From: Isurus oxyrinchus
Taxonomy: Eukaryota
DNA length: 64,000 nt
NCBI GenBank assembly: GCA_026770705.1
Contig: JANJGN010000010.1
Coordinates: 40,176,001 to 40,240,000 of the forward strand
Direction of reading: 5' to 3'
In this document: positions 792-64,000 of the stretch, piece by piece
Layout of the letters: the number at the start of each line of letters is the position of its first letter
Numbering within the stretch: position 1 is the stretch's first letter
Program-made: the position numbers and the translations under genes
The notes under the pieces: model-generated
The model's database searches: none
Told to the model about the DNA's origin: nothing
The model's input: only the letters and a program-made list of their open reading frames with translations

Positions 792-881
792 TATTTTCTT
801 CATTCTTTACACCGTCGGATCCCTGTTCTTCATTTTTACTGTTAGGATCACTTTTAGCATTTGTAGAGTTTCCCTGCAAAT
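792..881 (-). CDS. Repeat exon, 90 nt: xLQGNSTNAKSDPNSKNEEQGSDGVKNEEN
   Basis: Acceptor AG is CT at 882-883; donor GTAAGT is ACTTAC at 786-791; frame open. Confidence 0.72.
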
Positions 882-3800
882 CTACATGAACAAAAATATA
901 CATGCCATTGTAAACTCATTGCATACAGGCGCTGAAACTACACTGGTAATGCAGTTCAATAGTCATAAAAGAATACCTATGTATTTAGTTAAGCTTAATG
1001 TGCCTTCATCTCAGGACAGATATTATTATTTCTCAGCTAAATGCTGCATGAGGGGCCTTCAGAATAATGCAAAATTTCATCTCACAGTGAATAATAGTGC
1101 ATTGTAGGCTTCCCTCCTTTTCCTCAATATACATCAATCAATTAGCTTCAAATATTATTGGTAAAATTGTACAACGTAGATTCACATGCTAGCGACATAT
1201 CTTTTTGGGTTCAAATCATTGTACCAAGAACGTACTTTAAAGTACCAACACATCAATGAAGTTCTACGCTGAAAAATGGATCTATTTCTGAATTCTCTAT
1301 TTTGATCATTTTATCAAATATTATGACCAGTGTGAGAATTCAGCATTCCATCCAAAATGAGTTAGTTTTCAGACAGGATATCTGCTCAATTCCTGGACTG
1401 GAACATCAACACATATCCCCCTGACTGACAGAACAGGTTTCTGAATAATGGAGCTAATACTTCCTGGAATATGAGAAGGCACTTTGTGCTTTTGATTCTT
1501 TAGTGAAAAACAATTCATATTTTCTCCATTTCAAAGAATACATAAGCCATTTCATTACAACTATAGCCTCCACCATCCATTGCAATCCCTTAGTATATTT
1601 ACTTTCTCAGTACTTCCACTAGCATGCCTTATTTCTGCTGACTTCTCTACATCCCTTCTTTATTATGTGTTCTCTGTCCTTAACATAACATCAAGCAAAA
1701 GAAAGATATCTCAACTGGAGTCTTTTCAATCTTTCTGAGAAAGGAACCTCCACCCAATTAGACAAGCCGAATTTTTGCTCCTCAAGTCCAGTATTGATGA
1801 TGTGACAGAAGGAAAACAGAAAAGTGAATGCTAACTTTGTCTAAATAGACAAGTCCTGATCTGTTCCAAAGGATAGGGAAACTCCATTTGCACTAATGGG
1901 GCAGACATTCCATTGCTCCAATTCTGCATGAGTGATATCCACCTAGAGCTCGGCCAAGAACATTCCTGTGGCACCTGATCACTCAAAGCATGATAGAGGG
2001 AGTCAAGAAAGCGTCCAAACAACAAGATTGTTCTGTTCACCTTTGCTTCTCATTTTGTTTAGTGTGTCATGCTTAAAAAAAACTGTTGGCCTACATCATC
2101 ACTGAGCTAGGCCTACATCATCAATGAGATTTTGCTAACTGGAGCATTCTCCTACATTCCACATCATCAATAAATTGTATTTCTTTTTATTTGGTTAAAT
2201 ACTGCTTCCTCAGGGGAATCTTCCAAATACACAACCATTGGGATCTAGATCAGGAGAAGCAGCAGGTACAGGGGCACACCAACACATGCAACTTCCTCTC
2301 TAAGACTTACAAAATCCGGACTTGGAAATATGTGTCAATCCGTCATGGGCACTGGGTTGAAAACCAGAAACTGTCTCCCGATCAGCTCTGTGGATGTACC
2401 TAAACCACACGGATTGCAGCAATTCCAGAACCAGCATTAGCATCATACCAAGGACAATTAATGATGCTAATAAATGTACGATCTGTCAAAATTACCCACA
2501 TCCCATCGGCAAATAAATGAAAGCTTTGCGCAACTTACTATTTTCTTCATTCTTTACACCGTCGGATCCTTGTTCTTCATTTTTACTGTTAGGATCACAT
2601 TTAGCATTTGTAGAGTTTCCCTGCAAATCTACATGAACAAAAATATACATGCCATTGTAACCTCATTGCATACAGGCGCTGAAACTACACTGGTAATGCA
2701 GTTCAATAGTCATAAAAGAATACCTATGTACTTAGTTAAGCTTAATGTGCCTTCATCTCAGGACAGATATTATTATTTCTCAGCTAAGTGCTGCATGAGG
2801 GGCCTTCAGAATAATGCAAAATTTCAACTCACAGTGAATAATAGTGCCTTGTAGGCTTCCCCCCTTTTCCTCAATACACATCAATCAATTAGCTTCAAAT
2901 ATTATTGGTAAAATTGTACAACGTAGATTCACATGCTAGCGACATATCTTTTTGGGTTCAAATCATTGTACCAAGAACGTACTTTAAAGTACCAACACAT
3001 CAATGAAGTTCTACGCTGAAAAATGGATCTATTACTGAATTCTCTATTTTGATCATTTTATCAAATATTATGACCAGTGTGAGAATTCAGCATTCCATCC
3101 AAAATGAGTTAGTTTTCAGACAGGATATCTGCTCAATTCCTGGACTGGAACATCAACACATATCCCCCTGACTGACAGAACAGGTTTCTGAATAATGGAG
3201 CTAATACTTCCTGGAATATGAGAATGCACTTTGTGCTTTTGATTCTTTAGTGAAAAACAATTCATATTTTCTCCATTTCAAAGAATACATAAGCCATTTC
3301 ATTACAACTATAGCCTCCACCATCCATTGCAATCCCTTAGTATATTTACTTTCTCAGTACTTCCACTAGCATGCCTTATTTCTGCTGACTTCTCTACATC
3401 CCTTCTTTATTATGTGTTCTCTGTACTTAACATTACATCAAGCAAAAGAAAGATATCTCAACTGGAGTATTTTCAATCCTTTCTGAGAAAGGAACCTCCA
3501 CCCAATTAGACAAGCTGAATTTTTGCTCCTCAAGTCCAGTATTGATGATGTGACAGAAGGAAAACAGAAAAGTGAATGCTAACTTTGTCTAAATAGACAA
3601 GTCCTGATCTGTTCCAAAGGATAGGGAATCTCCATTTGCACTAATGGGGCAGACATTCCGTTGCTCCAATACTGCATGAGTGATATCCACCTAGAGCTCG
3701 GCCAAGAACGTTCCTGTGGCACCTGATCACTCAGAGCATGATAGAGGGAGCCAAGAAAGCGTCCAAACAACAAGATTGTTCTGTTCACCTTTGCTTCTCA

Positions 3801-6800
3801 TTTTGTTTAGTGTGTCAATCTTAAAAAAAACTGTTGGCCTACATCATCACTGAGCTAGGCCTACATCATCAATGAGATTTTGCTAACTGGACCATTCTCC
3901 TACATTCCACATCATCAATAAATTGTATTTCTTTTTATTTGGTTAAATACTGCTTAGTCAGGGGAATCTTCCAAATACACAGCCATTGGGATCTAGATCA
4001 GGAGAAGCAGCAGGTACAGGGGCACACCAACACATGCAACTTCCTCTCTAAGACTTACAAAATCCGGACTTGGAAATATGTGTCAATCCGTCATGAGCAC
4101 TGGGTTGAAAACCAGAAACTGCTTCCCGATCAGCTCTGTGGATTTAGCTAAACCACATGGATTGCAGCAATTCCAGAACCAGCATTAGCATTATACCAAG
4201 GACAATTAATGATGTTAATAAATGTACGATCTGTCAAAATTACCCACATCCCATCGGCAAATAAATGAAAGCATTGCGCAACTTACTATTTTCTTCATTC
4301 CTTACACCGTCGGATCCCTGTTCTTCATTTTTACTGTTAGGATCACTTTTAGCATTTGTAGAGTTTCCCTGCAAATCTACATGAACAAAAATATACATGC
4401 CATTGTAAACTCATTGCATACAGGCGCTGAAATTACACTGGTAATGCAGTTCAATAGTCATAAAAGAATACCTATGTATTTAGTTAAGCTTAATGTGCCT
4501 TCATCTCAGGACAGATATTATTATTTCTCAGCTAAGTGCTGCATGAGGGGCCTTCAGAATAATGCAAAATTTCAACTCACAGTGAATAATAGTGCCTTGT
4601 AGGCTTCCCTCCTTTTCCTCAATATACATCAATCAATTAGCTTCAAATATTATTGGTAAAATTGTACAACGTAGATTCACATGCTAGCGACATATCTTTT
4701 TGGGTTCAAATCATTGTACCAAGAACGTACTTTAAAGTACCAACACATCAATGAAGTTCTACGCTGAAAAATGGATCTATTTCTGAATTCTCTATTTTGA
4801 TCATTTTATCAAGTATTATGACCAGTGTGAGAATTCAGCATTCCATCCAAAATGAGTTAGTTTTCAGACAGGATATCTGCTCAATTCCTGGACTGGAACA
4901 TCAACACATATCCCCCTGACTGACAGAACAGGTTTCTGAATAATGGAGCTAATACTTCCTGGAATATGAGAAGGCACTTTGTGCTTTTGATTCTTTAGTG
5001 AAAAACAATTCATATTTTCTCCATTTCAAAGAATACATAAGCCATTTCATTACAACTATAGCCTCCACCATCCATTGCAATCCCTTAGTATATTTACTTT
5101 CTCAGTACTTCCACTAGCATGCCTTATTTCTGCTGACTTCTCTACATCCCTTCTTTATTATGTGTTCTCTGTACTTAACATTACATCAAGCAAAAGAAAG
5201 ATATCTCAACTGGAGTATTTTCAATCCTTTCTGAGAAAGGAACCTCCACCCAATTAGACAAGCTGAATTTTTGCTCCTCAAGTCCAGTATTGATGATGTG
5301 ACAGAAGGAAAACAGAAAAGTGAATGCTAACTTTGTCTAAATAGACAAGTCCTGATCTGTTCCAAAGGATAGGGAATCTCCATTTGCACTAATGGGGCAG
5401 ACAGTCCGTTGCTCCAATACTGCATGAGTGATATCCACCTAGAGCTCGGCCAAGAACGTTCCTGTGGCACCTGATCACTCAGAGCATGATAGAGGGAGCC
5501 AAGAAAGCGTCCAAACAACAAGATTGTTCTGTTCACCTTTGCTTCTCATTTTGTTTAGTGTGTCAATCTTAAAAAAAACTGTTGGCCTACATCATCACTG
5601 AGCTAGGCCTACATCATCAATGAGATTTTGCTAACTGGACCATTCTCCTACATTCCACATCATCAATAAATTGTATTTCTTTTTATTTGGTTAAATACTG
5701 CTTAGTCAGGGGAATCTTCCAAATACACAGCCATTGGGATCTAGATCAGGAGAATCAGCAGGTACAGGGGCACACCAACACATGCAACTTCCTCTCTAAG
5801 ACTTACAAAATCCGGACTTGGAAATATGTGTCAATCCGTCATGAGCACTGGGTTGAAAACCAGAAACTGCATCCCGATCAGCTCTGTGGATTTAGCTAAA
5901 CCACATGGATTGCAGCAATTCCAGAACCAGCATTAGCATTATACCAAGGACAATTAATGATGTTAATAAATGTACGATCTGTCAAAATTACGCACATCCC
6001 ATCGGCAAATAAATGAAAGCATTGCGCAACTTACTATTTTCTTCATTCCTTACACCGTCGGATCCCTGTTCTTCATTTTTACTGTTAGGATCACTTTTAG
6101 CATTTGTAGAGTTTCCCTGCAAATCTACATGAACAAAAATATACATGCCATTGTAAACTCATTGCATACAGGCGCTGAAATTACACTGGTAATGCAGTTC
6201 AATAGTCATAAAAGAATACCTATGTATTTAGTTAAGCTTAATGTGCCTTCATCTCAGGACAGATATTATTATTTCTCAGCTAAGTGCTGCATGAGGGGCC
6301 TTCAGAATAATGCAAAATTTCAACTCACAGTGAATAATAGTGCCTTGTAGGCTTCCCTCCTTTTCCTCAATATACATCAATCAATTAGCTTCAAATATTA
6401 TTGGTAAAATTGTACAACGTAGATTCACATGCTAGCGAAATATCTTTTTGGGTTCAAATCATTGTACCAAGAACGTACTTTAAAGTACCAACACATCAAT
6501 GAAGTTCTACGCTGAAAAATGGATCTATTTCTGAATTCTCTATTTTGATCATTTTATCAAGTATTATGACCAGTGTGAGAATTCAGCATTCCATCCAAAA
6601 TGAGTTAGTTTTCAGACAGGATATCTGCTCAATTCCTGGACTGGAACATCAACACATATCCCCCTGACTGACAGAACAGGTTTCTGAATAATGGAGCTAA
6701 TACTTCCTGGAATATGAGAAGGCACTTTGTGCTTTTGATTCTTTAGTGAAAAACAATTCATATTTTCTCCATTTCAAAGAATACATAAGCCATTTCATTA

Positions 6801-9800
6801 CAACTATAGCCTCCACCATCCATTGCAATCCCTTAGTATATTTACTTTCTCAGTACTTCCACTAGCATGCCTTATTTCTGCTGACTTCTCTACATCCCTT
6901 CTTTATTATGTGTTCTCTGTCCTTAACATAACATCAAGCAAAAGAAAGATATCTCAACTGGAGTATTTTCAATCCTTTCTGAGAAAGGAACCTCCACCCA
7001 ATTAGACAAGCTGAATTTTTGCTCCTCAAGTCCAGTATTGATGATGTGACAGAAGGAAAACAGAAAAGTGAATGCTAACTTTGTCTAAATAGACAAGTCC
7101 TGATCTGTTCCAAAGGATAGGGAAACTCCATTTGCACTAATGGGGCAGACATTCCATTGCTCCAATTCTGCATGAGTGATATCCACCTAGAGCTCGGCCA
7201 AGAACCTTCCTGTGGCACCTGATCACTCAGAGCATGATAGAGGGAGCCAAGAAAGCGTCCAGAAAACAAGATTGTTCTGTTCACCTTTGCTTCTCATTTT
7301 TTTTAGTGTATCAATCTTAAAAAAAACTGTTGGCTTACATCATCACTGAGCTAGGCCTACATCATCAATGAGATTTTGCTAACTGGAGCATTCTCCTACA
7401 TTCCACATCATCAATAAATTGTATTTCTTTTTATTTGGTTAAATACTGCTTCCTCAGAGGAATCTTCCAAATACACAACCATTGGGATCCAGATAAGGAG
7501 GGGCAGCAGGTACAGGGGCACACCAACACATGCAACTTCCTCTCTAAGACTTACAAAATCCGGACTTATGTGTCAATCCGTCATGGGCACTGGGTTGAAA
7601 ACCAGAAACTGCTTCCCGATCAGCTCTGTGGATGTACCTAAATCACATGGATTGCAGCAATTCCAGAACCAGCATTAGCATCATACCAAGGACAATTAAT
7701 GATGCTAATAAATGTACGATCTGTCAAAATTACCCACATCCCATCGGCAAATAAATGAAAGCTTTGCGCAACTTACTATTTTCTTCATTGTTCACACCGT
7801 CGGTTCCCTGTTCTTCATTTTTACTGTTAGGATCACTTTTAGCATTTGTAGAGTTTCCCTGCAAATCTACATGAACAAAAATATACATGCCATTGTAAAC
7901 TCATTGCATACAGGCGCTGAAAGTACACTGGTAATGCTGTTCAATAGTCATAAAAGAATACCTATGTATTTAGTTAAGCTTAATGTGCCTTCATCTCAGG
8001 ACAGATATTATTATTTCTCAGCTAAGTGCTGCATGAGGGGCCTTCAGAATAATGCAAAATTTCATCTCACAGTGAATAATAGTGCCTTGTAGGCTTCCCT
8101 CCTATTCCTCAATATACATCAATCAATTAGCTTCAAATATTATTGGTAAAATTGTACAACGTAGATTCACATGCTAGCGACATATCTTTTTGGGTTCAAA
8201 TCATTGTACCAAGAACGTACTTTAAAGTACCAACACATCAATGAAGTTCTACGCTGAAAAATGGATCTATTTCTGAATTCTCTATTTTGATCATTTTATC
8301 AAATATTATGACCAGTGTGAGAATTCAGCATTCCATCCATAATGAGTTAGTTTTCAGACAGGATATCTGCTCAATTCCTGGACTGGAACATCAACACATA
8401 TCCCCCTGACTGACAGAACAGGTTTCTGAATAATGGAGCTAATACTTCCTGGAATATGAGAAGGCACTTTGTGCTTTTGATTCTTTAGTGAAAAACAATT
8501 CATATTTTCTCCATTTCAAAGAATACATAAGCCATTTCATTACAACTATAGCCTCCATCATCCATTGCAATCCCTTAGTATATTTACTTTCTCAGTACTT
8601 CCACTAGCATGCCTTATTTCTGCTGAATTCTCTACATCCCTTCTTTATTATGTGTTCTCCGTCCTTAACATAACATCAAGCAAAAGAAAGATATCTCAAC
8701 TGGAGTATTTTCAATCCTTTCAGAGAAAGGAACCTCCACCCAATTAGACAAGCTGAATTTTTGGTCCTCAAGTCCAGTATTGATGATGTGACAGAAGGAA
8801 AACAGAAAAGTGAATGCTAACTTTGTCTAAATAGACAAGTCCTGATCTGTTCCAAAGGATAGGGAAACTCCATTTGCACTAATGGGGCAGACATTCCATT
8901 GCTCCAATTCTGCATGAGTGATATCCACCTAGAGCTCGGCCAAGAACATTCCTGTGGCACCTGATCACTCAAAGCATGATAGAGGGAGTCAAGAAAGCGT
9001 CCAAACAACAAGATTGTTCTGTTCACCTTTGCTTCTCATTTTGTTTAGTGTGTCATGCTTAAAAAAAACTGTTGGCCTACATCATCACTGAGCTAGGCCT
9101 ACATCATCAATGAGATTTTGCTAACTGGAGCATTCTCCTACATTCCACATCATCAATAAATTGTATTTCTTTTTATTTGGTTAAATACTGCTTCCTCAGG
9201 GGAATCTTCCAAATACACAACCATTGGGATCTAGATCAGGAGAAGCAGCAGGTACAGGGGCACACCAACACATGCAACTTCCTCTCTAAGACTTACAAAA
9301 TCCGGACTTGGAAATATGTGTCAATCCGTCATGGGCACTGGGTTGAAAACCAGAAACTGCCTCCCGATCAGCTCTGTGGATGTACCTAAACCACACGGAT
9401 TGCAGCAATTCCAGAACCAGCATTAGCATCATACCAAGGACAATTAATGATGCTAATAAATGTACGATCTGTCAAAATTACCCACATCCCATCGGCAAAT
9501 AAATGAAAGCATTGCGCAACTTACTATTTTCTTCATTCCTTACACCGTCGGATCCCTGTTCTTCATTTTTACTGTTAGGATCACTTTTAGCATTTGTAGA
9601 GTTTCCCTGCAAATCTACATGAACAAAAATATACATGCAATTGTAAACTCATTGCATACAGGCGCTGAAATTACACTGGTAATGCAGTTCAATAGTCATA
9701 AAAGAATACCTATGTATTTAGTTAAGCTTAATGTGCCTTCATCTCAGGACAGATATTATTATTTCTCAGCTAAGTGCTGCATGAGGGGCCTTCAGAATAA

Positions 9801-51800: not shown

Positions 51801-54800
51801 TATTGGTAAAATTGTACAACGTAGATTCACATGCCAGTGACATATCTTTTTGGGTTCAAATCATTGTACCAAGAACGTACTTTAATGTAACGATACATCA
51901 ATGAAGTTCTACGCTGAGAAATGGATCTATTTCTGAATTCTCTATTTTGATCATTTTATCAAATATTATGACCAGTGTGAGAATTCAGCATTCCATCCAA
52001 AATGAGTTAGTTTTCAGACAAGATATCTCCTCAAGTCCTGGACTGGAACATCAACACATATCCCCCTGACTGACAGAACAGGTTTCTGAATAATGGAGCT
52101 AATACTTCCTGGAATATGAGAAGGCACTTTGTGCTTTTGATTCTTTAGTGAAAAACAATTCATATTTTCTCCATTTCAAGGAATACATCAGCCATTTCAT
52201 TACAACTATAGCCTCCACCATCCATTGCAATCCCTTAGTATATTTACTTTCACAGTACTTCCACTAGCATGCCTTATTTCTGATGACTTCTCTACATCCC
52301 TTCTTTATTATGTGTTCTCTGTCCTTAACATTACATCAAGCAAAAGAAAGATATCTCAACTGGAGTATTTTCAATCCTTTCTGAGAAAGGAAACTCCACC
52401 CAATTAGACAAGCTGAATTTTTGCTCCTCAAGTCCAGTATTGATAATGTGACAGAAGGAAAACAGAAAAGTGAATGCTAACTTTGTCTAAATAGACAAGT
52501 CCTGATCTGTTTCAAAGGATAGGGAATCTCCATTTGCACTAATGGGGCAGACGTTCCGTTGCTCCAATTCTGCATGAGTGATATCCACCTGGAGCTCGGC
52601 CAAGAACCTTCCTGTGGCACCTGATCACTCAGAGCATGATAGAGGGAGCCAAGAAAGCGTCCAAACAACAAGATTGTTCTGTTCACCTTTGCTTCTCATT
52701 TTGTTTAGTGTGTCAATCTCAAAAAAAACTGTTGGCCAACATCATCACTGAGCTAGGCCTACATCATCAATGAGATTTTGCTAACTGGAGCATTCTCCTA
52801 CATTCCCCATCATCAATAAATTGTATTTCTATTTATTTGGTTAAATACTGCTTCGTCAGGGGAATCTTCCAAATACACAACCATTGGGATGGAGATCAGG
52901 AGAAGCAGCAGGTAGAGGGGCACACCAACACATGCAACTTCCTCTCTAAGACTTACAAAATCCGGACTTGGAAATATGTGTCAATCCGTCATGGGCACTG
53001 GGTTGAAAACCAGAAACTGCCTCCCGATCAGCTCTGTGGATGTACCTAGACCACACGGATTGCAGCAATTCCAGAACCAGCATTAGCATCATACCAAGGA
53101 CAATTAATGATGCTAATAAATGTACGATCTGTCAAAATTATCCACATCCCATCGGCAAATGAATGAAAGCTTTGCGCAACTTACTATTTTCTTCATTCTT
53201 TACACCGTCGGTTCCCTGTTCTTCATTTTTACTGTTAGGATCACTTTTAGCATTTGTAGAGTTTCCCTGCAAATCTACATGAACAAAAATATACATGCCA
53301 TTGTAAACTCATTGCATACAGGCGCTGAAAATACATTGGTAATGCAGTTCAATAATCATAAAAGAATACCTATGTATTTAGTTAAGCTTAATGTGCCTTC
53401 TTCTCAGGACAGATATTATTATTTCTCAGCTAAGTGCTGCATGAGGGTCCTTCAGAATAATGCAAAATTTCATCTCGCAGTGAATAATAGTGCCTTGTAG
53501 GCTTCCCTCCTTTTCCTCAATATACATCAATCAATTAGCTTCAAATATTATTAGTAAAATTGTACAACATAGAATCACATGCGAGCGACATATCTTTTTG
53601 GGTTCAATCATTGTACCAAGAACGTACTTCAATGTAACGATACATCAATGAAGTTCTACGCTATAAAATGGATCTATTTCTGAATTCTCTATTTTGATCA
53701 TTTTATGAAATATTATGACCAGTGTGAGAATTCAGCATTCCATCCAAAATGAGTTAGTTTTCAGACAAGATATCTCCTCAAGTCCTGGACTGGAACATCA
53801 ACACATATCCCCCTGACTGACAGAACAGGTTTCTGAATAATGGAGCTAATACTTCCTGGAATATGAGAAGGCACTTTGTGCTTTTGATTCTTTAGTGAAA
53901 AACAATTCATATTTTCTCCATTTCAAAGAATACATCAGCCATTTCATTACAACTATAGCCACCACCATCCATTGCAATCCCTTAGTATATTTACCAACTC
54001 AGTACTTCCACTAACATGCCTTATTTCTGCTGACTTCTCTACATCCCTTCTTTATTATGTGTTCTCTGTCCTTAACATAACATCAAGCAAAAGAAAGATA
54101 TCTCAACTGGAGTATTTTCAATCCTTTCTGAGAAAGGAACCTCCACCCAATTAGGCAAGCTGAATTTTTGCTCCACAAGTCCAGTATTGATAATGTGACA
54201 GAAGGAAAACAGAAAAGTGAATGCTAACTTTGTCTAAATAGACAAGTCCTGATCTGTTCCAAAGGATAGGGAATCTCCATTTGCACTAATGGGGCAGACA
54301 TTCCGTTGCTCCAATTCTGCATGAGTGATATCCACCTAGAGCTCGGCCAAGAACCTTCCTGTGGCACCTGATCACTCAGAGCATGATAGAGGGAGCCAAG
54401 AAAGCGTCCAAACAACAAGATTGTTCTGTTCACCTTTGCTTCTCATTCTGTTTAGTGTGTCAATCTTAAAAAAAACTGTTGGCCTACATCATCACTGAGC
54501 TAGGCCAACATCATCAATGAGATTTTGCTAACTGGAGCATTCTCCTACATTCCACATCATCAATAAATTTCATTTCTTTTTACTTGGTTAAATACTGCTT
54601 CATCAGGGGAATCGTCCAAATACACAACCATTGGGATCTAGATCAGGAGAAGCAGCAGGTAGAGGGGCACACAAACACATGCAACTTCCTCTCTAAGACT
54701 TACAAAATCCGGACTTGGAAATATGTGTCAATCCTTCATGGGCACTGGGTTGAAAACCAGAAACTGCCTCCCGATCAGTTCTGTGGATGTACCTACACCA

Positions 54801-57800
54801 CACGGATTGCAGCAATTCCAGAACCAGCATTAGCATCATACCAAGGACAATTAATGATGCTAATAAATGTACGATCTGTCAAAATTACCCACATCCCATC
54901 GGCAAATAAATGAAAGCTTTGCGCAACTTACCATTTTCTTCATTGTTTACACCGTCCATTCCCTGTTCACGGTTTGCTGGTTTGTCATTATGAACCTCCA
55001 CCATTTCAGTCGTAGGTTCACTTTTATCATTTGAAGAGTTTCCCTTCGAAACTACATGAACAAAAATATACATGCCATTGTAAACTCATTGCATACTGGA
55101 TCTGAAACTAAACTGATAATGCATTTGAATAATCATAAAAGAATACCTGTGCTTTTAGTAAAGCTTAATTTTCCTTCACCTCAGGACAGATATTATTATT
55201 TCTCAGCTAAGTGCTGCATGAGGGACCTTCAGAATAATGCAAAATTTCATCTCACAGTGAATAATAGTTCCTTGTATGCTTCCCTCCCTTTCCTCAATAT
55301 ACATCAATCAATTAGCTTCAAGTATTATTGGTAAAATTGTACAACGTAGTTTCACATGCGGCCCAGGAACCTACTAGCAACATATCTTTTTGGGGTTAAA
55401 TCATTGTACAAAGAATGTACTTCAATGTAACGATACATCAGTGAAGTTCTATGCTGAAAAATGGATCTATTCCTGAATTCTACATTTTGATCATGCTATC
55501 AAATATTATGACAAATGTGTGAATTCATCATTTCATCCAAAATGAGTTAGGTTTCAGACAAGATATCAGCTCAAGTCCTGGACTGGAACATCAACATATT
55601 TCCCACAGACTGACAGACCAGGTTTCTGAATAATGGAGTTATTACTTCGATGAATATGACAAGGCATTTTGTGCTTTTGATGCTTCAGTGAAAAACAATT
55701 CATATTTTCTCCATTTCAAAGAGTACATAAGCCATTTCGTTACAACTATTGCCTCCACCATCCATTGCAATCCCTTAGTATATTTACTTTCTCAGTACTT
55801 CCACTAGCATGCCTTATTTCTGCTGACTTCTCTACATCCCTTCTTTATTATGTGTTCTCTGTCCTTAACATAACATCAAGCAAAAAATGATATCTCAACT
55901 GGATTATTTTTAATCCTTTCTGAGAAAGGAACCTCCACCCAATTAGACAAGCTGAATTTTTGCTCCTCAAGTCCAGTATTGATGATGTGACAGAAGGAAA
56001 ACAAAAAAGTGAATGCTAACTTTGTCTAAATAGACATGTCCTGATCTGTTTCAAGGGATAGGGAATCTCCATTTGCACTAATGGGGCAGACATTCCGTTG
56101 CTCCAATTCTGCATGAGTGATATCCACCTGGAGTTCGGCCAAGAACCTTCCTGTGGCAACTGATCACTCAGAGCATGATAGAGGGAGCCAAGAAAGCGTC
56201 CAAACAACAAGATTGTTCTGTTCACCTTTGCTTCTCATTTTGTTTAGTGTGTCAATCTCAAAAAAAACTGTTGGCCTACATCATCACTGAGCTAGGCCTA
56301 CATCATCAATGAGATTTTGCTAACTGGAGCATTCTCCTACATTCTCCATCATCAATAAATTGTATTTCTATTTATTTGGTTAAATACTGCTTCGTCAGTA
56401 TTCGTCAGGGGAATCTTCCAAATACACAACCATTGGGATCTAGATCAGGAGAAGCAGCAGGTAGAGGGGCACACCAACACATGCAACTTCCTCTCGAAGA
56501 CTTACAAAATCCGGACTTGGAAATATTTGTCAATCCTTCATGGGCACTGGGTTGAAAACCAGAAACTGCCTCCCGATCAGCTCTGTGGATGTACCTAGAC
56601 CACACGGATTGCAGCAATTCCAGAACCAGCATTAGCATCATACCAAGGACAATTAATGATGCTAATAAATGTACGATCTGTCAAAATTACCCACATCCCA
56701 TCGGCAAATAAATGAAAGATTTGCGCAACTTACTATTTTCTTCATTCTTTTCACTGTCGGTTCCCTGTTCTTCATTTTTACCGTTAGGTTCACTTTTAGC
56801 ATTTGTAGAGTTTCCCTGCAAATCTACATGAACAAAAATATACATGCCATTGTAAACTCATTGCATACAGCCGCTGAAACTACACTGGTAATGCAGTTCA
56901 ATAATCATAAAAGAATACCTATGTATTTAGTTAAGCTTAATGTTCCTTCATCTCAGGACAGATATTATTATTTCTCAGCTACGTGCTGCATGAGGGGCCT
57001 TCAGAATAATGCAAAATTTCATCTCGCAGTGAATAATAGTGCCTTGTAGGCTTCCCTCACTTTCCTCAATATACATCAATCAATTAGCTTCAAATATTAT
57101 TGGTAAAATTGTACAACGTAGATTCACATGCTAGTGACATATCTTTTTGGGTTTAAATCATTGTACCAAGAACATATTTTAATGTAACGATACATCAATG
57201 AAGTTCTACGCTGAAAAATGGATCTATTTCTGAATTCTCTAATTTGATCATTTTATCAAATATTATGACCAGTGTGAGAATTCAGCATTCCATCCAAAAT
57301 GAGTTAGTTTTCAGACAAGATATCTGCTCAAGTCCTGGACTGGAACATCAACACATATCCCCCTGACTGACAGAACAGGTTTCTGAATAATGGAGCTAAT
57401 ACTTCCTGGAATATGAGAAGGCACTTTGTGCTTTTAATTCTTTAGTGAAAAACAGTTCATATTTTCTCCATTGCAAAGAATACATCAGCCATTTCATTAC
57501 AACTATAGCCTCCACCATCCATTGGAATCCCTTAGTATATTTACTTTCTCAGTACTTCCACTAGCATGCCTTATTTCTGATGACTTCTCTACATCCCTTC
57601 TTTATTATGTGTTCTCTGTCCTTAACATAACATCAAGCCAAAGAAAGATATCTCAACTGGAGTATTTTCAATCCTTTCTGAGAAAGGAACCTCCACCCAA
57701 TTAGACAAGCTGAATTTTTGCTCCTCAAGTCCAGTATTGATGATGTGACAGAAGGAAAACAGAAAAGTGAATGCTAACTTTGTCTAAATAGACAAGTCCT

Positions 57801-60800
57801 GATCTGTTTCTAAGGATAGGGAATCTCCATTTGCACTAATGGGGCAGACATTCCGTTTCTCCAATTCTGCATGAGTGATATCCACCTAGAGCTCGGCCAA
57901 GAACCTTCCTGTGGCACCTGATCACTCAGAGCATGATAGAGGGAGCCAAGAAAGCTTCCAAACAACAAGATTGTTCTGTTCACCTTTGCTTCTCATTTTG
58001 TTTAGTGTGTCAATCTTAAAAAAAACTGTTGGCCTGCATCATCACTGAGCTAGGCCTACATCATCAATGAGATTACGCAAACTGCAGCATTCTCCTACAT
58101 TCCCCATCATCAATATATTGTATTTCTTTTTATTTGGTAAAATACTGCTTCGTCAGGGGAATCTTCCAAATGCACAACCATTGGGATGGAGATCAGGAGA
58201 AGCAGCAGGTAGAGGGGCACACCAACACATGCAACTTCCTCTCTAAGACTTACAAAATCCGGACGTGGAAATATATGTCAATCCGTCATGGGCACTGAGT
58301 TGAAAACTGCCTCCCGATCAGCTCTGTGGATGTACCTACACCACACGGATTGCAGCAATTCCAGATCCAGCATTAGCATTATACCAAGGACAATTAATGA
58401 TGCTAATAAATGTACGATCTGTCAAAATTACCCACATCCCATCGGCAAATAAATGAAAGATTTGCGCAACTTACTATTTTCTTCATTCTTTTCACTGTCG
58501 GTTCCCTGTTCTTCATTTTTACTGTTAGGTTCACTTTTAGCATTTGTAGAGTTTCCCTGCAAATCTACATGAACAAAAATATACATGCCATTGTAAACTC
58601 ATTGCATACAGGCGCTGAAACTACACTGGTAATGCAGTTCAATAATCATAAAAGAATACCTATGTATTTTGTTAAGCTTAATGTGCCTTCATCTCAGGAC
58701 AGATATTATTATTTCTCAGCTAAGTGCTGCATGAGGGGCCTTCAGAATAATGCAAAATTTCATCTCACAGTGAATAATAGTGCCTTGTAGGCTTCGCTCC
58801 TTTTCCTCAATATACATCAATCAATTAGCTTCAAATATTATTGGTAGAATTGTACAACATAGATTCGCATGCTAGCGACATATCTTTTTGGGTTCAAATC
58901 ATTGTACCAAGAACGTACTTTAATGTAACGATACATCAATGAAGTTCTACGCTATAAAATGGATCTATTTCTGAATTCTCTATTTTGATCATTTTATCAA
59001 ATATTATGACCAGTGTGAGAATTCAGCATTCCATCCAAAATGAGTTAGTTTTCAGACAAGATATCTCCTCAAGTCCTGGACTGGAACATCAACACATATC
59101 CCCCTGACTGACAGAACAGGTTTCTGAATAATGGAGCTAATACTTCCTGGAATATGAGAAGGCACTTTGTGCTTTTGATTCTTTAGTGAAAAACAATTCA
59201 TATTTTCTCCATTTCAAAGAATACATAAGCCATTTCATTACAACTATAGCCTCCACCATCCATTGCAATCCCTTAGTATATTTACTTTCTCAGTACTTCC
59301 ACTAGCATGCCTTATTTCTGCTGACTTCTCTACATCCCTTCTTTATTATGTGTTCTCTGTACTTAACATAACATCAAGCAAAAGAAAGATATCTCAACTG
59401 GAGTATTTTTAATCCTTTCTGAGAAAGGAACCTCCACCCAATTCGACAAGCTGTATTTTTGCTCCTCAAGTCCAGTATTGATGATGTGACAGAAGGAAAA
59501 CAGAAAAGTGAATGCTAACTTTGTCTAAATAGACAAGTCCTGATCTGTTTCAAAGGATAGGGAATCTCCATTTGCACTAATGGGGCAGACATTCCGTTGC
59601 TCCAATTCTGCATGAGTGATATCCACCTGGAGCTCGGCCAAGAACCTTCCTGTGGCACCTGATCACTCAGAGCATGATAGAGGGAGCCAAGAAAGCGTCC
59701 AAGCAACAAGATTGTTCTGTTCACCTTTGCTTCTCATTTTGTTTAGTGTGTCAATCTCAAAAAAACTGTTGGCCAACATCATCACTGAGCTCGGCCTACA
59801 TCATCAATGAGATTTTGCAAACTGGAGCATTCTCCTACATTCCTCATCATCAATAAATTGTATTTCTATTTATTTGGTTAAATACTGCTTTGTCAGGGGA
59901 ATCTTCCAAATACACAACCATTGGGATGTAGATCAGGATAAGCAGCAGGTAGAGGGGCACACCAACACATGCAACTTCCTCTCTAAGACTTACAAAATCC
60001 GGACTTGGAAATATTTGTCAATCCTTCATGGGCACTGGGTTGAAAACCAGAAACTGCCTCCCGATCAGCTCTGTGGATGTACCTAGACCACACGGATTGC
60101 AGCAATTCCAGAACCATCATTAGCATCATACCAAGGACAATTAATGATGCTAATAAATGTACGATCTGTCAAAATTACCCACATCCCATCGGCAAATAAA
60201 TGAAAGATTTGCGCAACTTACTATTTTCTTCATTCTTTTCACTGTCGGTTCCCTGTTCTTCATTTTTACCGTTAGGTTCACTTTTAGCATTTGTAGAGTT
60301 TCCCTGCAAATCTACATGAACAAAAATATACATGCCATTGTAAACTCATTGCATACAGCCGCTGAAACTACACTGGTAATGCAGTTCAATAATCATAAAA
60401 GAATACCTATGTATTTAGTTAAGCTTAATGTTCCTTCATCTCAGGACAGATATTATTATTTCTCAGCTACGTGCTGCATGAGGGGCCTTCAGAATAATGC
60501 AAAATTTCATCTCGCAGTGAATAATAGTGCCTTGTAGGCTTCCCTCACTTTCCTCAATATACATCAATCAATTAGCTTCAAATATTATTGGTAAAATTGT
60601 ACAACGTAGATTCACATGCTAGTGACATATCTTTTTGGGTTTAAATCATTGTACCAAGAACATATTTTAATGTAACGATACATCAATGAAGTTCTACGCT
60701 GAAAAATGGATCTATTTCTGAATTCTCTAATTTGATCATTTTATCAAATATTATGACCAGTGTGAGAATTCAGCATTCCATCCAAAATGAGTTAGTTTTC

Positions 60801-63799
60801 AGACAAGATATCTGCTCAAGTCCTGGACTGGAACATCAACACATATCCCCCTGACTGACAGAACAGGTTTCTGAATAATGGAGCTAATACTTCCTGGAAT
60901 ATGAGAAGGCACTTTGTGCTTTTAATTCTTTAGTGAAAAACAGTTCATATTTTCTCCATTGCAAAGAATACATCAGCCATTTCATTACAACTATAGCCTC
61001 CACCATCCATTGGAATCCCTTAGTATATTTACTTTCTCAGTACTTCCACTAGCATGCCTTATTTCTGATGACTTCTCTACATCCCTTCTTTATTATGTGT
61101 TCTCTGTCCTTAACATAACATCAAGCCAAAGAAAGATATCTCAACTGGAGTATTTTCAATCCTTTCTGAGAAAGGAACCTCCACCCAATTAGACAAGCTG
61201 AATTTTTGCTCCTCAAGTCCAGTATTGATGATGTGACAGAAGGAAAACAGAAAAGTGAATGCTAACTTTGTCTAAATAGACAAGTCCTGATCTGTTTCTA
61301 AGGATAGGGAATCTCCATTTGCACTAATGGGGCAGACATTCCGTTTCTCCAATTCTGCATGAGTGATATCCACCTAGAGCTCGGCCAAGAACCTTCCTGT
61401 GGCACCTGATCACTCAGAGCATGATAGAGGGAGCCAAGAAAGCTTCCAAACAACAAGATTGTTCTGTTCACCTTTGCTTCTCATTTTGTTTAGTGTGTCA
61501 ATCTTAAAAAAAACTGTTGGCCTGCATCATCACTGAGCTAGGCCTACATCATCAATGAGATTACGCAAACTGCAGCATTCTCCTACATTCCCCATCATCA
61601 ATATATTGTATTTCTTTTTATTTGGTAAAATACTGCTTCGTCAGGGGAATCTTCCAAATGCACAACCATTGGGATGGAGATCAGGAGAAGCAGCAGGTAG
61701 AGGGGCACACCAACACATGCAACTTCCTCTCTAAGACTTACAAAATCCGGACGTGGAAATATATGTCAATCCGTCATGGGCACTGAGTTGAAAACTGCCT
61801 CCCGATCAGCTCTGTGGATGTACCTACACCACACGGATTGCAGCAATTCCAGATCCAGCATTAGCATTATACCAAGGACAATTAATGATGCTAATAAATG
61901 TACGATCTGTCAAAATTACCCACATCCCATCGGCAAATAAATGAAAGATTTGCGCAACTTACTATTTTCTTCATTCTTTTCACTGTCGGTTCCCTGTTCT
62001 TCATTTTTACTGTTAGGTTCACTTTTAGCATTTGTAGAGTTTCCCTGCAAATCTACATGAACAAAAATATACATGCCATTGTAAACTCATTGCATACAGG
62101 CGCTGAAACTACACTGGTAATGCAGTTCAATAATCATAAAAGAATACCTATGTATTTTGTTAAGCTTAATGTGCCTTCATCTCAGGACAGATATTATTAT
62201 TTCTCAGCTAAGTGCTGCATGAGGGGCCTTCAGAATAATGCAAAATTTCATCTCACAGTGAATAATAGTGCCTTGTAGGCTTCGCTCCTTTTCCTCAATA
62301 TACATCAATCAATTAGCTTCAAATATTATTGGTAGAATTGTACAACATAGATTCGCATGCTAGCGACATATCTTTTTGGGTTCAAATCATTGTACCAAGA
62401 ACGTACTTTAATGTAACGATACATCAATGAAGTTCTACGCTATAAAATGGATCTATTTCTGAATTCTCTATTTTGATCATTTTATCAAATATTATGACCA
62501 GTGTGAGAATTCAGCATTCCATCCAAAATGAGTTAGTTTTCAGACAAGATATCTCCTCAAGTCCTGGACTGGAACATCAACACATATCCCCCTGACTGAC
62601 AGAACAGGTTTCTGAATAATGGAGCTAATACTTCCTGGAATATGAGAAGGCACTTTGTGCTTTTGATTCTTTAGTGAAAAACAATTCATATTTTCTCCAT
62701 TTCAAAGAATACATAAGCCATTTCATTACAACTATAGCCTCCACCATCCATTGCAATCCCTTAGTATATTTACTTTCTCAGTACTTCCACTAGCATGCCT
62801 TATTTCTGCTGACTTCTCTACATCCCTTCTTTATTATGTGTTCTCTGTACTTAACATAACATCAAGCAAAAGAAAGATATCTCAACTGGAGTATTTTTAA
62901 TCCTTTCTGAGAAAGGAACCTCCACCCAATTCGACAAGCTGTATTTTTGCTCCTCAAGTCCAGTATTGATGATGTGACAGAAGGAAAACAGAAAAGTGAA
63001 TGCTAACTTTGTCTAAATAGACAAGTCCTGATCTGTTTCAAAGGATAGGGAATCTCCATTTGCACTAATGGGGCAGACATTCCGTTGCTCCAATTCTGCA
63101 TGAGTGATATCCACCTGGAGCTCGGCCAAGAACCTTCCTGTGGCACCTGATCACTCAGAGCATGATAGAGGGAGCCAAGAAAGCGTCCAAGCAACAAGAT
63201 TGTTCTGTTCACCTTTGCTTCTCATTTTGTTTAGTGTGTCAATCTCAAAAAAACTGTTGGCCAACATCATCACTGAGCTCGGCCTACATCATCAATGAGA
63301 TTTTGCAAACTGGAGCATTCTCCTACATTCCTCATCATCAATAAATTGTATTTCTATTTATTTGGTTAAATACTGCTTTGTCAGGGGAATCTTCCAAATA
63401 CACAACCATTGGGATGTAGATCAGGATAAGCAGCAGGTAGAGGGGCACACCAACACATGCAACTTCCTCTCTAAGACTTACAAAATCCGGACTTGGAAAT
63501 ATGTGTCAATCCTTCATGGGCACTGGGTTGAAAACCAGAAACTGCCTCCCGATTAGCTCTGTGGATGTACCTAGACCACACGGATTGCAGCAATTCCAGA
63601 ACCAGCATTAGCATCATACCATGGACAATTAATGATGCTAATAAATGTACGATCTGTCAAAATTACCCACATCCCATCAGCAAATAAGTGAAAGCTTTGC
63701 GCAACTTACTATTTTCTTCATTCTTTACACTGCCGGTTCCCTGTTCTTCATTTTTACTGTTAGGATCACTTTTAGCATTTGTAGAGTTCCCCTGCAAAT
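792..63799 (-). CDS. Putative spliced, partial gene: 37 tandem phase-1 exons separated by ~1.66-kb introns, encoding a 30-aa Asn/Glu/Ser-rich repeat; start and stop lie outside the window
   Basis: Each unit reads TTTTTGTTCATGTAG | 90 nt | GTAAGT on the minus strand. Exon length is a multiple of 3, no copy has a stop or frameshift, GAAGAA enhancer-like motifs are present, and the divergent copy gains exactly 30 nt in frame. Confidence 0.75.
882..2538 (-). other. Representative GT-AG intron (1,657 nt), forming the rest of the repeat unit
   Basis: Starts GTAAGTTGCG and ends TTGTTCATGTAG on the minus strand; all frame-breaking indels seen in the array fall in this part of the unit. Confidence 0.7.
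2539..2628 (-). CDS. Repeat exon (AKCDP variant)
   Basis: AG/GTAAGT intact, 90 nt, open. Confidence 0.7.
4287..4376 (-). CDS. Repeat exon (QGSDGVRNEEN)
   Basis: AG/GTAAGT intact, 90 nt, open. Confidence 0.7.
6035..6124 (-). CDS. Repeat exon (QGSDGVRNEEN)
   Basis: AG/GTAAGT intact, 90 nt, open. Confidence 0.7.
7777..7866 (-). CDS. Repeat exon (QGTDGVNNEEN)
   Basis: AG/GTAAGT intact, 90 nt, open. Confidence 0.7.
9525..9614 (-). CDS. Repeat exon (QGSDGVRNEEN)
   Basis: AG/GTAAGT intact, 90 nt, open. Confidence 0.7.
11273..11362 (-). CDS. Repeat exon (QGSDGVKNEEN)
   Basis: AG/GTAAGT intact, 90 nt, open. Confidence 0.7.
13014..13103 (-). CDS. Repeat exon (QGTGGVNNEEN)
   Basis: AG/GTAAGT intact, 90 nt, open. 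Confidence 0.7.
14762..14851 (-). CDS. Repeat exon (QGSDGVKNEEN)
   Basis: AG/GTAAGT intact, 90 nt, open. Confidence 0.7.
16504..16593 (-). CDS. Repeat exon (QGTDGVNNEEN)
   Basis: AG/GTAAGT intact, 90 nt, open. Confidence 0.7.
18252..18341 (-). CDS. Repeat exon (QGTDGVNNEEN)
   Basis: AG/GTAAGT intact, 90 nt, open. Confidence 0.7.
20000..20089 (-). CDS. Repeat exon (QGTDGVNNEEN)
   Basis: AG/GTAAGT intact, 90 nt, open. Confidence 0.7.
21748..21837 (-). CDS. Repeat exon (QGSDGVKNEEN)
   Basis: AG/GTAAGT intact, 90 nt, open. Confidence 0.7.
23496..23585 (-). CDS. Repeat exon (QGSDGVKNEEN)
   Basis: AG/GTAAGT intact, 90 nt, open. Confidence 0.7.
25239..25328 (-). pseudogene. Repeat exon with inactivated donor (GTAAGT>ATAAGT), probable pseudo-exon
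   Basis: Plus strand reads CAACTTATTA instead of CAACTTACTA (C>T at 25238); the frame itself is still open. Confidence 0.6.
26987..27076 (-). CDS. Repeat exon (KYEEQGTDSVKNAEN)
   Basis: AG/GTAAGT intact, 90 nt, open. Confidence 0.7.
28735..28824 (-). CDS. Repeat exon (QGSDGVKNEEN)
   Basis: AG/GTAAGT intact, 90 nt, open. Confidence 0.7.
30478..30567 (-). pseudogene. Repeat exon with inactivated donor (GTAAGT>ATAAGT), higher-order-repeat copy of 25239-25328
   Basis: C>T at 30477 on the plus strand. Confidence 0.6.
32226..32315 (-). CDS. Repeat exon (KYEEQGTDSVKNAEN)
   Basis: AG/GTAAGT intact, 90 nt, open. Confidence 0.7.
33969..34058 (-). CDS. Repeat exon (LEGNST...QGTDGVKNEEN)
   Basis: AG/GTAAGT intact, 90 nt, open. 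Confidence 0.7.
35716..35805 (-). CDS. Repeat exon (LEGNST...QGTDGLKNEEN)
   Basis: AG/GTAAGT intact, 90 nt, open; the same substitution creates a stop in the overlapping plus-strand ORF. Confidence 0.7.
37463..37552 (-). CDS. Repeat exon (LEGNST...QGTDGVKNEEN)
   Basis: AG/GTAAGT intact, 90 nt, open. Confidence 0.7.
39209..39298 (-). CDS. Repeat exon (QGTGGVKNEEN)
   Basis: AG/GTAAGT intact, 90 nt, open. Confidence 0.7.
40949..41038 (-). CDS. Repeat exon (SEPNGKNEEQGTDSEKNEEN)
   Basis: AG/GTAAGT intact, 90 nt, open. Confidence 0.7.
42694..42783 (-). CDS. Repeat exon (QGTNSEKNEEN)
   Basis: AG/GTAAGT intact, 90 nt, open. Confidence 0.7.
44442..44531 (-). CDS. Repeat exon (SEPNGKNEEQGTDSEKNEEN)
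   Basis: AG/GTAAGT intact, 90 nt, open. Confidence 0.7.
46183..46272 (-). CDS. Repeat exon (SEPNSKNEEQGTDSEKNEEN)
   Basis: AG/GTAAGT intact, 90 nt, open. Confidence 0.7.
47930..48019 (-). CDS. Repeat exon (QGTGSVKNEEN)
   Basis: AG/GTAAGT intact, 90 nt, open. Confidence 0.7.
49678..49767 (-). CDS. Repeat exon (NSENEEQGTDSEKNEDN)
   Basis: AG/GTAAGT intact, 90 nt, open. Confidence 0.7.
51437..51526 (-). CDS. Repeat exon (QGTDSEKNEEN)
   Basis: AG/GTAAGT intact, 90 nt, open. Confidence 0.7.
53185..53274 (-). CDS. Repeat exon (QGTDGVKNEEN)
   Basis: AG/GTAAGT intact, 90 nt, open. Confidence 0.7.
54932..55051 (-). CDS. Divergent 120-nt repeat exon: xSKGNSSNDKSEPTTEMVEVHNDKPANREQGMDGVNNEEN
   Basis: Acceptor TTTTTGTTCATGTAG and donor ATG|GTAAGT intact; phase 1-1; net +10 codons; contained within ORF-track entry 54885..55073(-). 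Confidence 0.75.
56734..56823 (-). CDS. Repeat exon (SEPNGKNEEQGTDSEKNEEN)
   Basis: AG/GTAAGT intact, 90 nt, open. Confidence 0.7.
58475..58564 (-). CDS. Repeat exon (SEPNSKNEEQGTDSEKNEEN)
   Basis: AG/GTAAGT intact, 90 nt, open. Confidence 0.7.
60222..60311 (-). CDS. Repeat exon (SEPNGKNEEQGTDSEKNEEN)
   Basis: AG/GTAAGT intact, 90 nt, open. Confidence 0.7.
61963..62052 (-). CDS. Repeat exon (SEPNSKNEEQGTDSEKNEEN)
   Basis: AG/GTAAGT intact, 90 nt, open. Confidence 0.7.
63710..63799 (-). CDS. Repeat exon (QGTGSVKNEEN)
   Basis: AG/GTAAGT intact, 90 nt, open. Confidence 0.7.
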
Positions 63800-64000
63800 C
63801 TACATGAACAAAAATATACATGCCATTGTAAACTCATTGCATACAGGTGCTGAAACTACACTGGTAATGCAGTTCAATAATCATAAAAGAATACCTATGT
63901 ATTTTGTTAAGCTTAATGTGCCTTCATCTCAGGACAGATATTATTATTTCTCAGCTAAGTGCTACATGAGGGGCCTTCAGAATAATGCAAAATTTCATCT

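What the first reader, a model, noticed from the sequence alone, without database searches (positions are those of the whole stretch)
792..63799. The macrosatellite hides a coding array: one 90-nt symmetric exon per 1.75-kb unit
Seen: on the minus strand every unit has TATATTTTTGTTCATGTAG, then exactly 90 nt, then GTAAGT. The phase-1 frame has no stop in any of the 37 copies, and the 1-, 3-, 6-, 7-, 10- and 15-nt indels I noticed all lie outside the exon. Spliced exons join in frame (A+AT=Asn). The 35 donor-intact exons would give 3,180 nt, or 1,060 aa, and the array continues past both ends. Known: intragenic exon+intron tandem amplification occurs in NBPF/Olduvai, LPA KIV-2 and titin PEVK, but this peptide resembles none of them as far as I recognise. 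Inference: this is a large repeat protein that ORF finders miss and repeat masking would hide. Caveat: copies are young and the exon is only ~5% of the unit, so absence of stops alone is modest evidence.
Basis: partly seen in the sequence, partly recalled or inferred. Interest (0 to 1): 0.85.

Follow-up and report, generated by a model that had tools for sequence, protein, structure and literature searches.

The report
Shark macrosatellite carrying one exon per unit
A 1.75-kb tandem repeat filling this shark window carries one small in-frame exon per copy, and one public contig shows those exons joined exactly as predicted, so it is probably the repetitive core of an unannotated gene, though translation into protein is not shown.

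Summary
The acceptor motif occurs 37 times on the minus strand. It is followed by a 90-nt segment in 36 units and a 120-nt segment in one. GTAAGT follows in 35 units and ATAAGT in 2. One frame is stop-free in all 37. All other indels lie outside the exon. The array runs off both window ends.

Sequence alone is weak evidence for coding:
- The exon varies as fast as the intron (21 of 90 against 341 of 1658 variable columns).
- 6-10% of all 29-codon windows are stop-free in every unit.

Other evidence favours a real exon:
- It is the only splice-bounded, symmetric, open exon in the unit.
- The one exon-length change is 30 nt and in frame.
- The 44 nt before the acceptor are the least variable stretch of the unit.
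- One 120-nt contig in run X7 joins exon end to exon start exactly, and that run has no intron coverage.

I found no protein relative.

Verdict: spliced exon array about 0.8, translated repeat protein about 0.55. It is a new member of a known kind.

The scan also noted this array in the overlapping neighbouring window (s1-866805), and other coding macrosatellites elsewhere in this genome.

The parts
1..64000 (-). Tandem array of 1.74-1.78-kb units (36 complete units plus partial ones). It fills the window and runs off both ends.
   Evidence: Median pairwise divergence between units is 3.4%, maximum 7.1%.
63710..63799 (-). Candidate exon, 90 nt, phase 1/1, donor GTAAGT
61963..62052 (-). Candidate exon, 90 nt, donor GTAAGT
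60222..60311 (-). Candidate exon, 90 nt, donor GTAAGT
58475..58564 (-). Candidate exon, 90 nt, donor GTAAGT
56734..56823 (-). Candidate exon, 90 nt, donor GTAAGT. It lies in the most diverged unit.
54932..55051 (-). Divergent candidate exon, 120 nt (30 nt longer). Same phase, frame open, donor GTAAGT.
   Evidence: A 151-nt contig of run X1 covers 54964-55110 at depth 5.
53185..53274 (-). Candidate exon, 90 nt. The exon-exon junction contig of run X7 was laid here.
   Evidence: table 5 (joint 53274 to 53185, goes back 90) and table 8 (record 25).
51437..51526 (-). Candidate exon, 90 nt
49678..49767 (-). Candidate exon, 90 nt
47930..48019 (-). Candidate exon, 90 nt
46183..46272 (-). Candidate exon, 90 nt
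44442..44531 (-). Candidate exon, 90 nt
42694..42783 (-). Candidate exon, 90 nt
40949..41038 (-). Candidate exon, 90 nt
39209..39298 (-). Candidate exon, 90 nt
37463..37552 (-). Candidate exon, 90 nt
35716..35805 (-). Candidate exon, 90 nt
33969..34058 (-). Candidate exon, 90 nt
32226..32315 (-). Candidate exon, 90 nt. Its acceptor motif has the one mismatch.
30478..30567 (-). Candidate exon, 90 nt, donor mutated to ATAAGT
28735..28824 (-). Candidate exon, 90 nt
26987..27076 (-). Candidate exon, 90 nt
25239..25328 (-). Candidate exon, 90 nt, donor mutated to ATAAGT. Its unit is identical to the unit of exon 30478-30567.
23496..23585 (-). Candidate exon, 90 nt
21748..21837 (-). Candidate exon, 90 nt
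20000..20089 (-). Candidate exon, 90 nt
18252..18341 (-). Candidate exon, 90 nt
16504..16593 (-). Candidate exon, 90 nt
14762..14851 (-). Candidate exon, 90 nt
13014..13103 (-). Candidate exon, 90 nt
11273..11362 (-). Candidate exon, 90 nt
9525..9614 (-). Candidate exon, 90 nt
7777..7866 (-). Candidate exon, 90 nt
6035..6124 (-). Candidate exon, 90 nt
4287..4376 (-). Candidate exon, 90 nt
2539..2628 (-). Candidate exon, 90 nt
792..881 (-). Candidate exon, 90 nt, the last one in the window
2629..2672 (-). Example of the 44-nt region before the acceptor (likely branch point, pyrimidine tract and AG). It is the least variable 44-column stretch of the whole unit.
   Evidence: 3 variable columns of 44, against a median of 10. 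0.06% of windows have diversity as low.
21791..32332 (.). Exact block duplication of three units: 21791-27093 is identical to 27030-32332 (5,303 nt, offset 5,239). It carries both ATAAGT donors.
56630..63502 (.). Exact block duplication of two units: 56630-60014 is identical to 60118-63502 (3,385 nt, offset 3,488).

Best explanation
This is an intragenic macrosatellite in a shark genome. Each 1.75-kb unit holds one cassette exon on the minus strand and about 1.66 kb of intron. The exon is 90 nt in 36 units and 120 nt in one.

Every exon starts and ends after the first base of a codon, and its length is a multiple of three. So any number of units can be spliced head to tail, or skipped, without breaking the frame.

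The spliced array would encode a 30-residue repeat rich in Asn, Glu, Ser, Lys and Gly. It is acidic, almost free of hydrophobic residues, and carries one N-x-S/T sequon in every copy. The 35 donor-intact exons of this window alone would give about 1,060 residues.

I infer a long, disordered, probably glycosylated spacer or gel-like region of a larger, probably secreted or surface protein. Its first and last exons lie outside the window.

The array changes by unequal crossing-over of blocks of one to nine units.

Shown: the array, the splice-site anatomy, frame preservation, the constant acceptor region, and one exon-exon junction contig. Inferred: translation, glycosylation, location and function.
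For: -: the acceptor motif occurs 37 times.
- 36 exons of 90 nt and one of 120 nt. One frame is open in 37 of 37. The donor is GTAAGT in 35 of 37.
- on the gene strand the unit has only 2 GTRAGT donors. Of the 4 acceptor-donor pairs within 45-300 nt, only this one has a length that is a multiple of three and an open frame. The other strand has none.
- the single exon-length change is 30 nt and in frame, while the 15 distinct intron indel events include many of 1, 7 and 10 nt.
- the 44 columns before the acceptor have 3 variable columns against a median of 10. They are the lowest-diversity 44-column window of the unit.
- run X7 has a 120-nt contig (depth 4.7) that joins 53185 to 53274, exon end to exon start, with no ambiguity ('both' = 0) and 0 + 2 mismatches. 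X7 covers no intron (2 of 30 bins have depth). The DNA-like runs X1 and X3 cover introns but have no such joint.
- G4, N5 and S6 are invariant and position 7 is T or S, so the sequon is present in all 17 distinct exon peptides aligned, including the 120-nt exon.
- the exon is 69% purine against 52% for the intron.
Against: - No purifying selection on the exon is visible. 21 of 90 exon columns vary against 341 of 1658 intron columns (Fisher p = 0.51). Diversity is 0.044 against 0.032.
- Variants are 6 synonymous, 16 non-synonymous and 0 stop, against 48, 201 and 12 possible. About one stop is expected, so zero stops means little.
- 6.1% of 29-codon windows on this strand are open in all units anyway.
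- All 4 exon differences listed against the related organism's contig change the amino acid by my reading, table 3. The exon differs at 4 of 90 places, much like intron contigs at 3-6%.
- The junction is one short contig in 1 of 4 runs laid. That run is labelled 'RNA? (probably DNA)', and no listed holder is on record as RNA. The other RNA-guess run laid (X4) shows nothing on the exons.
- No protein relative was found: 0 hits among 1.84 billion representatives, 0 Pfam families, 0.
- No start, signal-peptide or terminal exon is visible in the window.
Confidence: 0.55

Rival explanations
1. Spliced but not translated. The units are spliced head to tail as above, but the product is a non-coding RNA, an untranslated part of a host transcript, or a set of low-level cryptic exons inside a host gene's intron. 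The open frame would be a by-product of young, near-identical copies.
For: - The exon evolves as fast as the intron, with a non-synonymous to synonymous ratio near neutral.
- An open frame of this length in all units is found in 6-10% of positions.
- The junction contig has a low depth of 4.7 and appears in one run only.
- No homologue exists in any library searched.
Against: - The one length change in an exon is 30 nt, and its new sequence stays open in the same frame. I estimate roughly a 1 in 10 chance if neutral.
- All exon lengths are multiples of three.
- The sequon and the first half of the peptide are kept even in the 60%-identical exon.
- None of this is decisive.
Confidence: 0.25
2. 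Inert macrosatellite. The splice-like sites and open frame are chance features of the amplified unit. The junction contig would come from DNA, such as an intronless 90-bp tandem copy elsewhere, from a single-exon circular RNA, or from an artefact.
For: - The tool labels X7 'RNA? (probably DNA)', and no listed holder of the stretch is on record as RNA.
- An end-to-start joint of one exon is also what a back-splice would give.
- There is no selection signal in the exon.
Against: - X7 shows no intron of a unit that occurs at least 37 times. Genomic DNA of this species at that depth should show the introns.
- The deep DNA-like runs X1 and X3 of the related organism hold the unit but have no such joint.
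- The joint falls exactly at the predicted AG and GT borders.
- The acceptor region is the most constant part of the unit.
Confidence: 0.15
3. Each unit is its own small gene, read without splicing. The candidates are the 52-codon ATG frame that runs from the pyrimidine tract through the exon into the intron, or the 126-codon frame on the opposite strand.
For: - The 52-codon frame is intact in 37 of 37 units. It is 62 codons in the 120-nt unit and 54 in one other.
- The opposite-strand frame is exactly 126 codons in 29 of 36 copies.
Against: - The opposite-strand frame is cut to 27 and 55 codons in 2 of 36 copies. Its variants are 21 synonymous, 48 non-synonymous and 1 stop, which looks neutral.
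- It has no Pfam family.
- The 52-codon frame has no relative. Its extra parts are only 7 and 15 codons, so staying open means nothing.
- The junction contig removes the intron part.
Confidence: 0.05

Closest known systems
Intragenic exon-bearing macrosatellites (coding VNTRs), for example the LPA kringle IV-2 array
   Same: Kilobase-sized tandem units each contain exon plus intron. Copy number sets the length of a repeat protein. PMC4063668 (passages read) states that macrosatellite units can include exons and treats LPA as an intragenic coding tandem repeat.
   Different: LPA units carry two exons that encode a folded kringle domain (recalled). Here there is one 90-nt exon encoding a low-complexity peptide with no Pfam match. 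At least 37 units lie in this window alone.
NBPF / Olduvai (DUF1220) arrays
   Same: These are tandemly amplified exon-plus-intron units inside a gene, with higher-order blocks. The abstract of 10.1101/2021.07.06.450945 (search listing) describes tandem three-domain blocks.
   Different: Olduvai is a defined Pfam domain encoded by an exon doublet, and the family is recalled as mammalian. The shark peptide matches no Pfam family, and each unit has a single exon.
Titin PEVK exon series
   Same: Many short (about 28-residue), same-phase cassette exons encode a disordered spring and can be skipped freely (recalled, not checked in any call).
   Different: PEVK is dominated by Pro, Glu, Val and Lys. 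This repeat has 1 Pro and 1 Val in 30 residues and 7 Asn. The introns here are near-identical 1.66-kb copies, which makes this a young macrosatellite.
Lineage-specific repeated exons in catshark Bgp (osteocalcin)
   Same: This is a shark precedent. RNA-seq-derived cDNA shows a series of imperfectly repeated extra exons between the signal peptide and the conserved domain. They have no predicted domain and are absent from elephant shark (PMC8006282, passages read).
   Different: There are about ten imperfect exons there, against at least 37 near-identical units here. No sequence from that gene was available to compare, so any link is untested.

Membership tests
Intragenic exon-bearing macrosatellite (coding tandem repeat) | Head-to-tail tandem units of at least 100 bp | tested here: met
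   37 motif copies at 1740-1777-nt spacing
Intragenic exon-bearing macrosatellite (coding tandem repeat) | Each unit has an exon with acceptor and donor sites | tested here: met
   AG acceptor with pyrimidine tract in 37 of 37 units. GTAAGT in 35 of 37. It is the only suitable site pair in the unit.
Intragenic exon-bearing macrosatellite (coding tandem repeat) | Exon length is a multiple of three, with the same frame open in all copies | tested here: met
   36 x 90 nt and 1 x 120 nt. The frame is open in 37 of 37. By itself this is weak.
Intragenic exon-bearing macrosatellite (coding tandem repeat) | Exon-exon junctions present in RNA | tested here: inconclusive
   One 120-nt contig with the exact junction, in 1 of 4 runs laid. 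The run's kind is only guessed. It has no intron coverage.
Intragenic exon-bearing macrosatellite (coding tandem repeat) | Flanked by unique in-phase exons of a host gene, and translated | not testable with these tools
   The array fills the window. No sequence beyond it could be read, and no proteomic data were available.
Titin PEVK | Composition dominated by Pro, Glu, Val and Lys | tested here: not met
   Consensus repeat: P 1, E 4, V 1, K 3 of 30, with N 7
Mucin PTS-type repeat | Pro, Thr and Ser make up a large share of the repeat | tested here: not met
   S 3 + T 2 + P 1 = 6 of 30 residues
Olduvai/DUF1220 and kringle (LPA) | Match to the Pfam domain | tested here: not met
   0 Pfam families at E up to 10 for the 30-aa and the 40-aa exon peptides

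The most novel reading that the evidence does not exclude
A lineage-restricted giant protein arose by runaway amplification of a single exon plus intron. It would now comprise at least 37 exons in this window, and about 50 or more if the neighbouring window's note is right. The exons would encode an orphan acidic, Asn-rich, one-sequon-per-30-residue polymer. Its length varies through block duplications that are still 100% identical. Selection acts on frame, splice sites and composition rather than on sequence. The protein is invisible to gene annotation and absent from 1.84 billion protein representatives.
Probability: 0.3. Interest if true: 0.6.

Novelty: new member of a known kind. Interest (0 to 1): 0.45.

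Why it matters
If the array is translated, a protein of well over 1,000 residues is missing from shark gene sets because repeat masking and ORF finders skip it. The scan has noted other coding macrosatellites in this genome, so this may be a systematic blind spot in large, repeat-rich genomes.

The locus would also be a clean case of a repeat protein whose length can change by whole exons through unequal crossing-over. Selection would be visible on splice sites and frame but not on the residues themselves.

If the array is only spliced and not translated, it is an ordinary transcribed macrosatellite.

Tried and rejected
- Protein relatives. A profile of 17 single-exon peptides against 1.84 billion representatives gave 0 hits. 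Pfam on the 30-aa and 40-aa exon peptides gave 0 families. The word-indexed search gave 0 candidates with the 40-aa exon and 0 with the 52-aa unspliced frame. That tool sees only proteins of 0.55-1.75 times the query length, so long proteins were out of reach there. A single copy of a 30-position profile cannot reach significance, so only multi-repeat or near-identical proteins are excluded.
- Selection tests came out neutral: exon against intron variability and synonymous against non-synonymous counts. They neither support nor exclude coding.
- Rfam on 3.7 kb gave only one sub-threshold chance match (S15 leader, 18.2 bits against a gathering score of 39.5).
- Other frames in the unit have no Pfam family (126, 69 and 70 aa). 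The 126-aa opposite-strand frame behaves neutrally.
- TRF with a maximum period of 500 does not see the 1.75-kb unit. Composition is flat across the window.
- Literature searches for a described shark case found none. 'shark' + 'macrosatellite' gave 3 unrelated papers. 'shark' + 'repeated exons' + 'tandem' gave 1 paper, on catshark Bgp. One search was uninformative. Supplements were not requested. Those of PMC8006282 hold the Bgp alignments, which might allow a comparison I could not make.
All protein queries were single exons or unspliced window frames. No structure prediction was run, because a 30-40-residue low-complexity piece would not give a usable model.

Full report
**What is there.** 36 matches are exact and one has a single mismatch, against 0.01 expected by chance. 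Spacing is 1740-1777 nt. Earlier notes of this scan identify the genome as a shark's; I did not test that. The window has no N and flat composition at 38% G+C. Window 1-791 and 63819-64000 align to the unit's intron, so the array runs off both ends.

**The candidate exon.**
- In 36 units the acceptor AG is followed by exactly 90 nt. In one unit (55051..54932) it is followed by 120 nt.
- The donor is GTAAGT in 35 units and ATAAGT in two.
- The frame beginning at exon base 3 is stop-free in all 37 exons. The other two frames have stops in many or all copies.
- Each exon ends with one base of a codon and starts with two, so neighbours join in frame.
- The indels of 1, 3, 6, 7, 10 and 15 nt all lie in intron columns.

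**How much of this is chance.**
- The open frame alone is weak evidence. 107 of 1748 (6.1%) 29-codon windows on this strand are stop-free in all 36 aligned units, and 9.6% over both strands.
- Among 35 units (the 120-nt unit left out), 21 of 90 exon columns vary against 341 of 1658 intron columns (Fisher p = 0.51). Diversity is 0.044 against 0.032.
- Exon variants are 6 synonymous, 16 non-synonymous and 0 stop, against 48, 201 and 12 possible. About one stop is expected by chance.

So there is no sign of purifying selection on the residues.

**What speaks for a real exon.**
- On the gene strand the unit consensus has only two GTRAGT donors and 13 acceptor-like sites. Of the 4 acceptor-donor pairs 45-300 nt apart, only this one has a length that is a multiple of three and an open frame. 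The other strand has no strong donor.
- The single length change inside an exon is 30 nt. Its divergent sequence is 60% identical as peptide and stays open in the same frame.
- The 44 columns before the acceptor hold the likely branch point, the pyrimidine tract and the AG. Only 3 of them vary, against a median of 10, and they are the lowest-diversity 44-column window of the unit. The window size was chosen after looking. With 25 columns it ranks in the lowest 2-6%, and with 60 columns it is unremarkable.
- The exon is 69% purine against 52% for the intron.

**Reads.**
- The look-up of sequencing runs listed 8 runs, and no listed holder is on record as RNA. I laid 4 of the 8 on 53150-56880.
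- X1 and X3 (organism A, kind unknown) cover exons and introns, mostly at 90-95% likeness (579 of 621 and 103 of 131 laid contigs). So a related organism's DNA holds the same unit at high depth. Typical pieces have depth of about 130-170, and the piece over the 120-nt exon has depth 5. These runs show no exon-exon joint.
- X7 (organism B, 'RNA? (probably DNA)') has one 120-nt contig at depth 4.7. Its first 46 letters are the end of an exon (0 mismatches) and its next 74 are the start of an exon (2 mismatches). They are joined exactly at 53185|53274 with no shared letters.
- X7 has depth in only 2 of 30 bins. One is this exon and the other is a ubiquitous short repeat at 54781-54823. It shows nothing on the introns of a unit that occurs at least 37 times, so at this locus it behaves like RNA and not like genomic DNA.
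- X4, the other RNA-guess run, shows only the ubiquitous repeat.
- Caveats: this is a single short contig. An end-to-start joint could also come from a back-splice. And contigs cannot show strand or expression level.

- A profile of 17 distinct single-exon peptides found 0 proteins among 1.84 billion representatives.
- Pfam found nothing for the 30-aa and 40-aa peptides.
- The word-indexed search found nothing with the 40-aa exon or the 52-aa unspliced frame.
- The repeat has N 7, E 4, G 3, S 3, K 3, Q 2, T 2, D 2 and L, A, P, V 1 each per 30 residues, with net charge -3.
- An N-S-T or N-S-S sequon is present in all 17 distinct peptides aligned.
- The composition fits neither PEVK nor a Pro/Thr/Ser mucin.

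**Array dynamics.**
- Units differ by a median of 3.4%, up to 7.1%.
- 21791-27093 is identical to 27030-32332 (5,303 nt, three units). 56630-60014 is identical to 60118-63502 (3,385 nt, two units).
- Both ATAAGT donors lie in the three-unit duplication, so they are one mutation copied once.
- These blocks are either very recent unequal exchanges or assembly duplications. I cannot tell which.

**Rival frames.**
- A 52-codon ATG frame through the unspliced exon is intact in 37 of 37 units. It adds only 7 and 15 codons to the exon.
- A 126-codon frame on the plus strand is 126 codons in 29 of 36 copies and is cut to 27 and 55 codons in two. It varies neutrally and has no Pfam family.

**Reading.**
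- Most likely (about 0.8) the units are spliced head to tail into a transcript.
- That the transcript is translated into a long, acidic, Asn-rich, probably glycosylated disordered repeat is plausible (about 0.55) but inferred only from frame preservation.
- The kind of thing is known. PMC4063668 (passages read) says that macrosatellite units can contain exons, with LPA as an intragenic coding repeat. PMC8006282 (passages read) describes lineage-specific repeated exons in catshark Bgp.
- My two shark-specific searches found no description of this array.
- Notes of this scan report the same array in the overlapping next window (s1-866805) and other coding macrosatellites in this genome (s1-900706, s1-900713). 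I did not check those.

Noticed in passing
window 54781-54823 (one copy per unit): A roughly 35-40-nt piece of the intron is a very high-copy interspersed repeat. Summed depth is about 107,000 in X1 and 600-7,200 in the other three runs. It sits inside long unrelated contigs of the RNA-guess run X4, for example near the end of a 3,571-nt contig. It is probably a fragment of a SINE or LINE tail.
   Followed up: no
window 21791-27093 = 27030-32332, and 56630-60014 = 60118-63502: These are perfectly identical block duplications of three units (5,303 nt) and two units (3,385 nt) inside an array whose units otherwise differ by about 3.4%. They are either very recent unequal crossing-over or an assembly duplication.
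   Followed up: partly
window 2474-2854 (+) and the same place in each unit: An opposite-strand ATG frame of 126 codons overlaps the exon and acceptor. It is 126 codons in 29 of 36 copies, longer in 4, 125 codons in 1, and cut to 27 and 55 codons in 2. It has no Pfam family and its variation looks neutral.
   Followed up: yes
window 2621-2628 and the same place in each unit: A second AG lies 8 nt inside the exon (TTTGCAG|GG). Using it would give an 82-nt, frame-breaking exon. The X7 contig uses the first AG. Three units (exons at 37552, 35805, 34058) read GGAG there.
   Followed up: no
window 26534-26576, 31773-31815, 42241-42283: In three units, TRF reports a 22-nt motif as two tandem copies at 90% match. 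Two of the three lie in the identical three-unit blocks.
   Followed up: no
window 53150-56880, laid runs X1 and X3: DNA-like runs of a differently coded organism hold the whole unit at mostly 90-95% likeness and high depth. They include a low-depth contig over the 120-nt exon variant. So both the array and its variant exon are shared with a related organism.
   Followed up: partly
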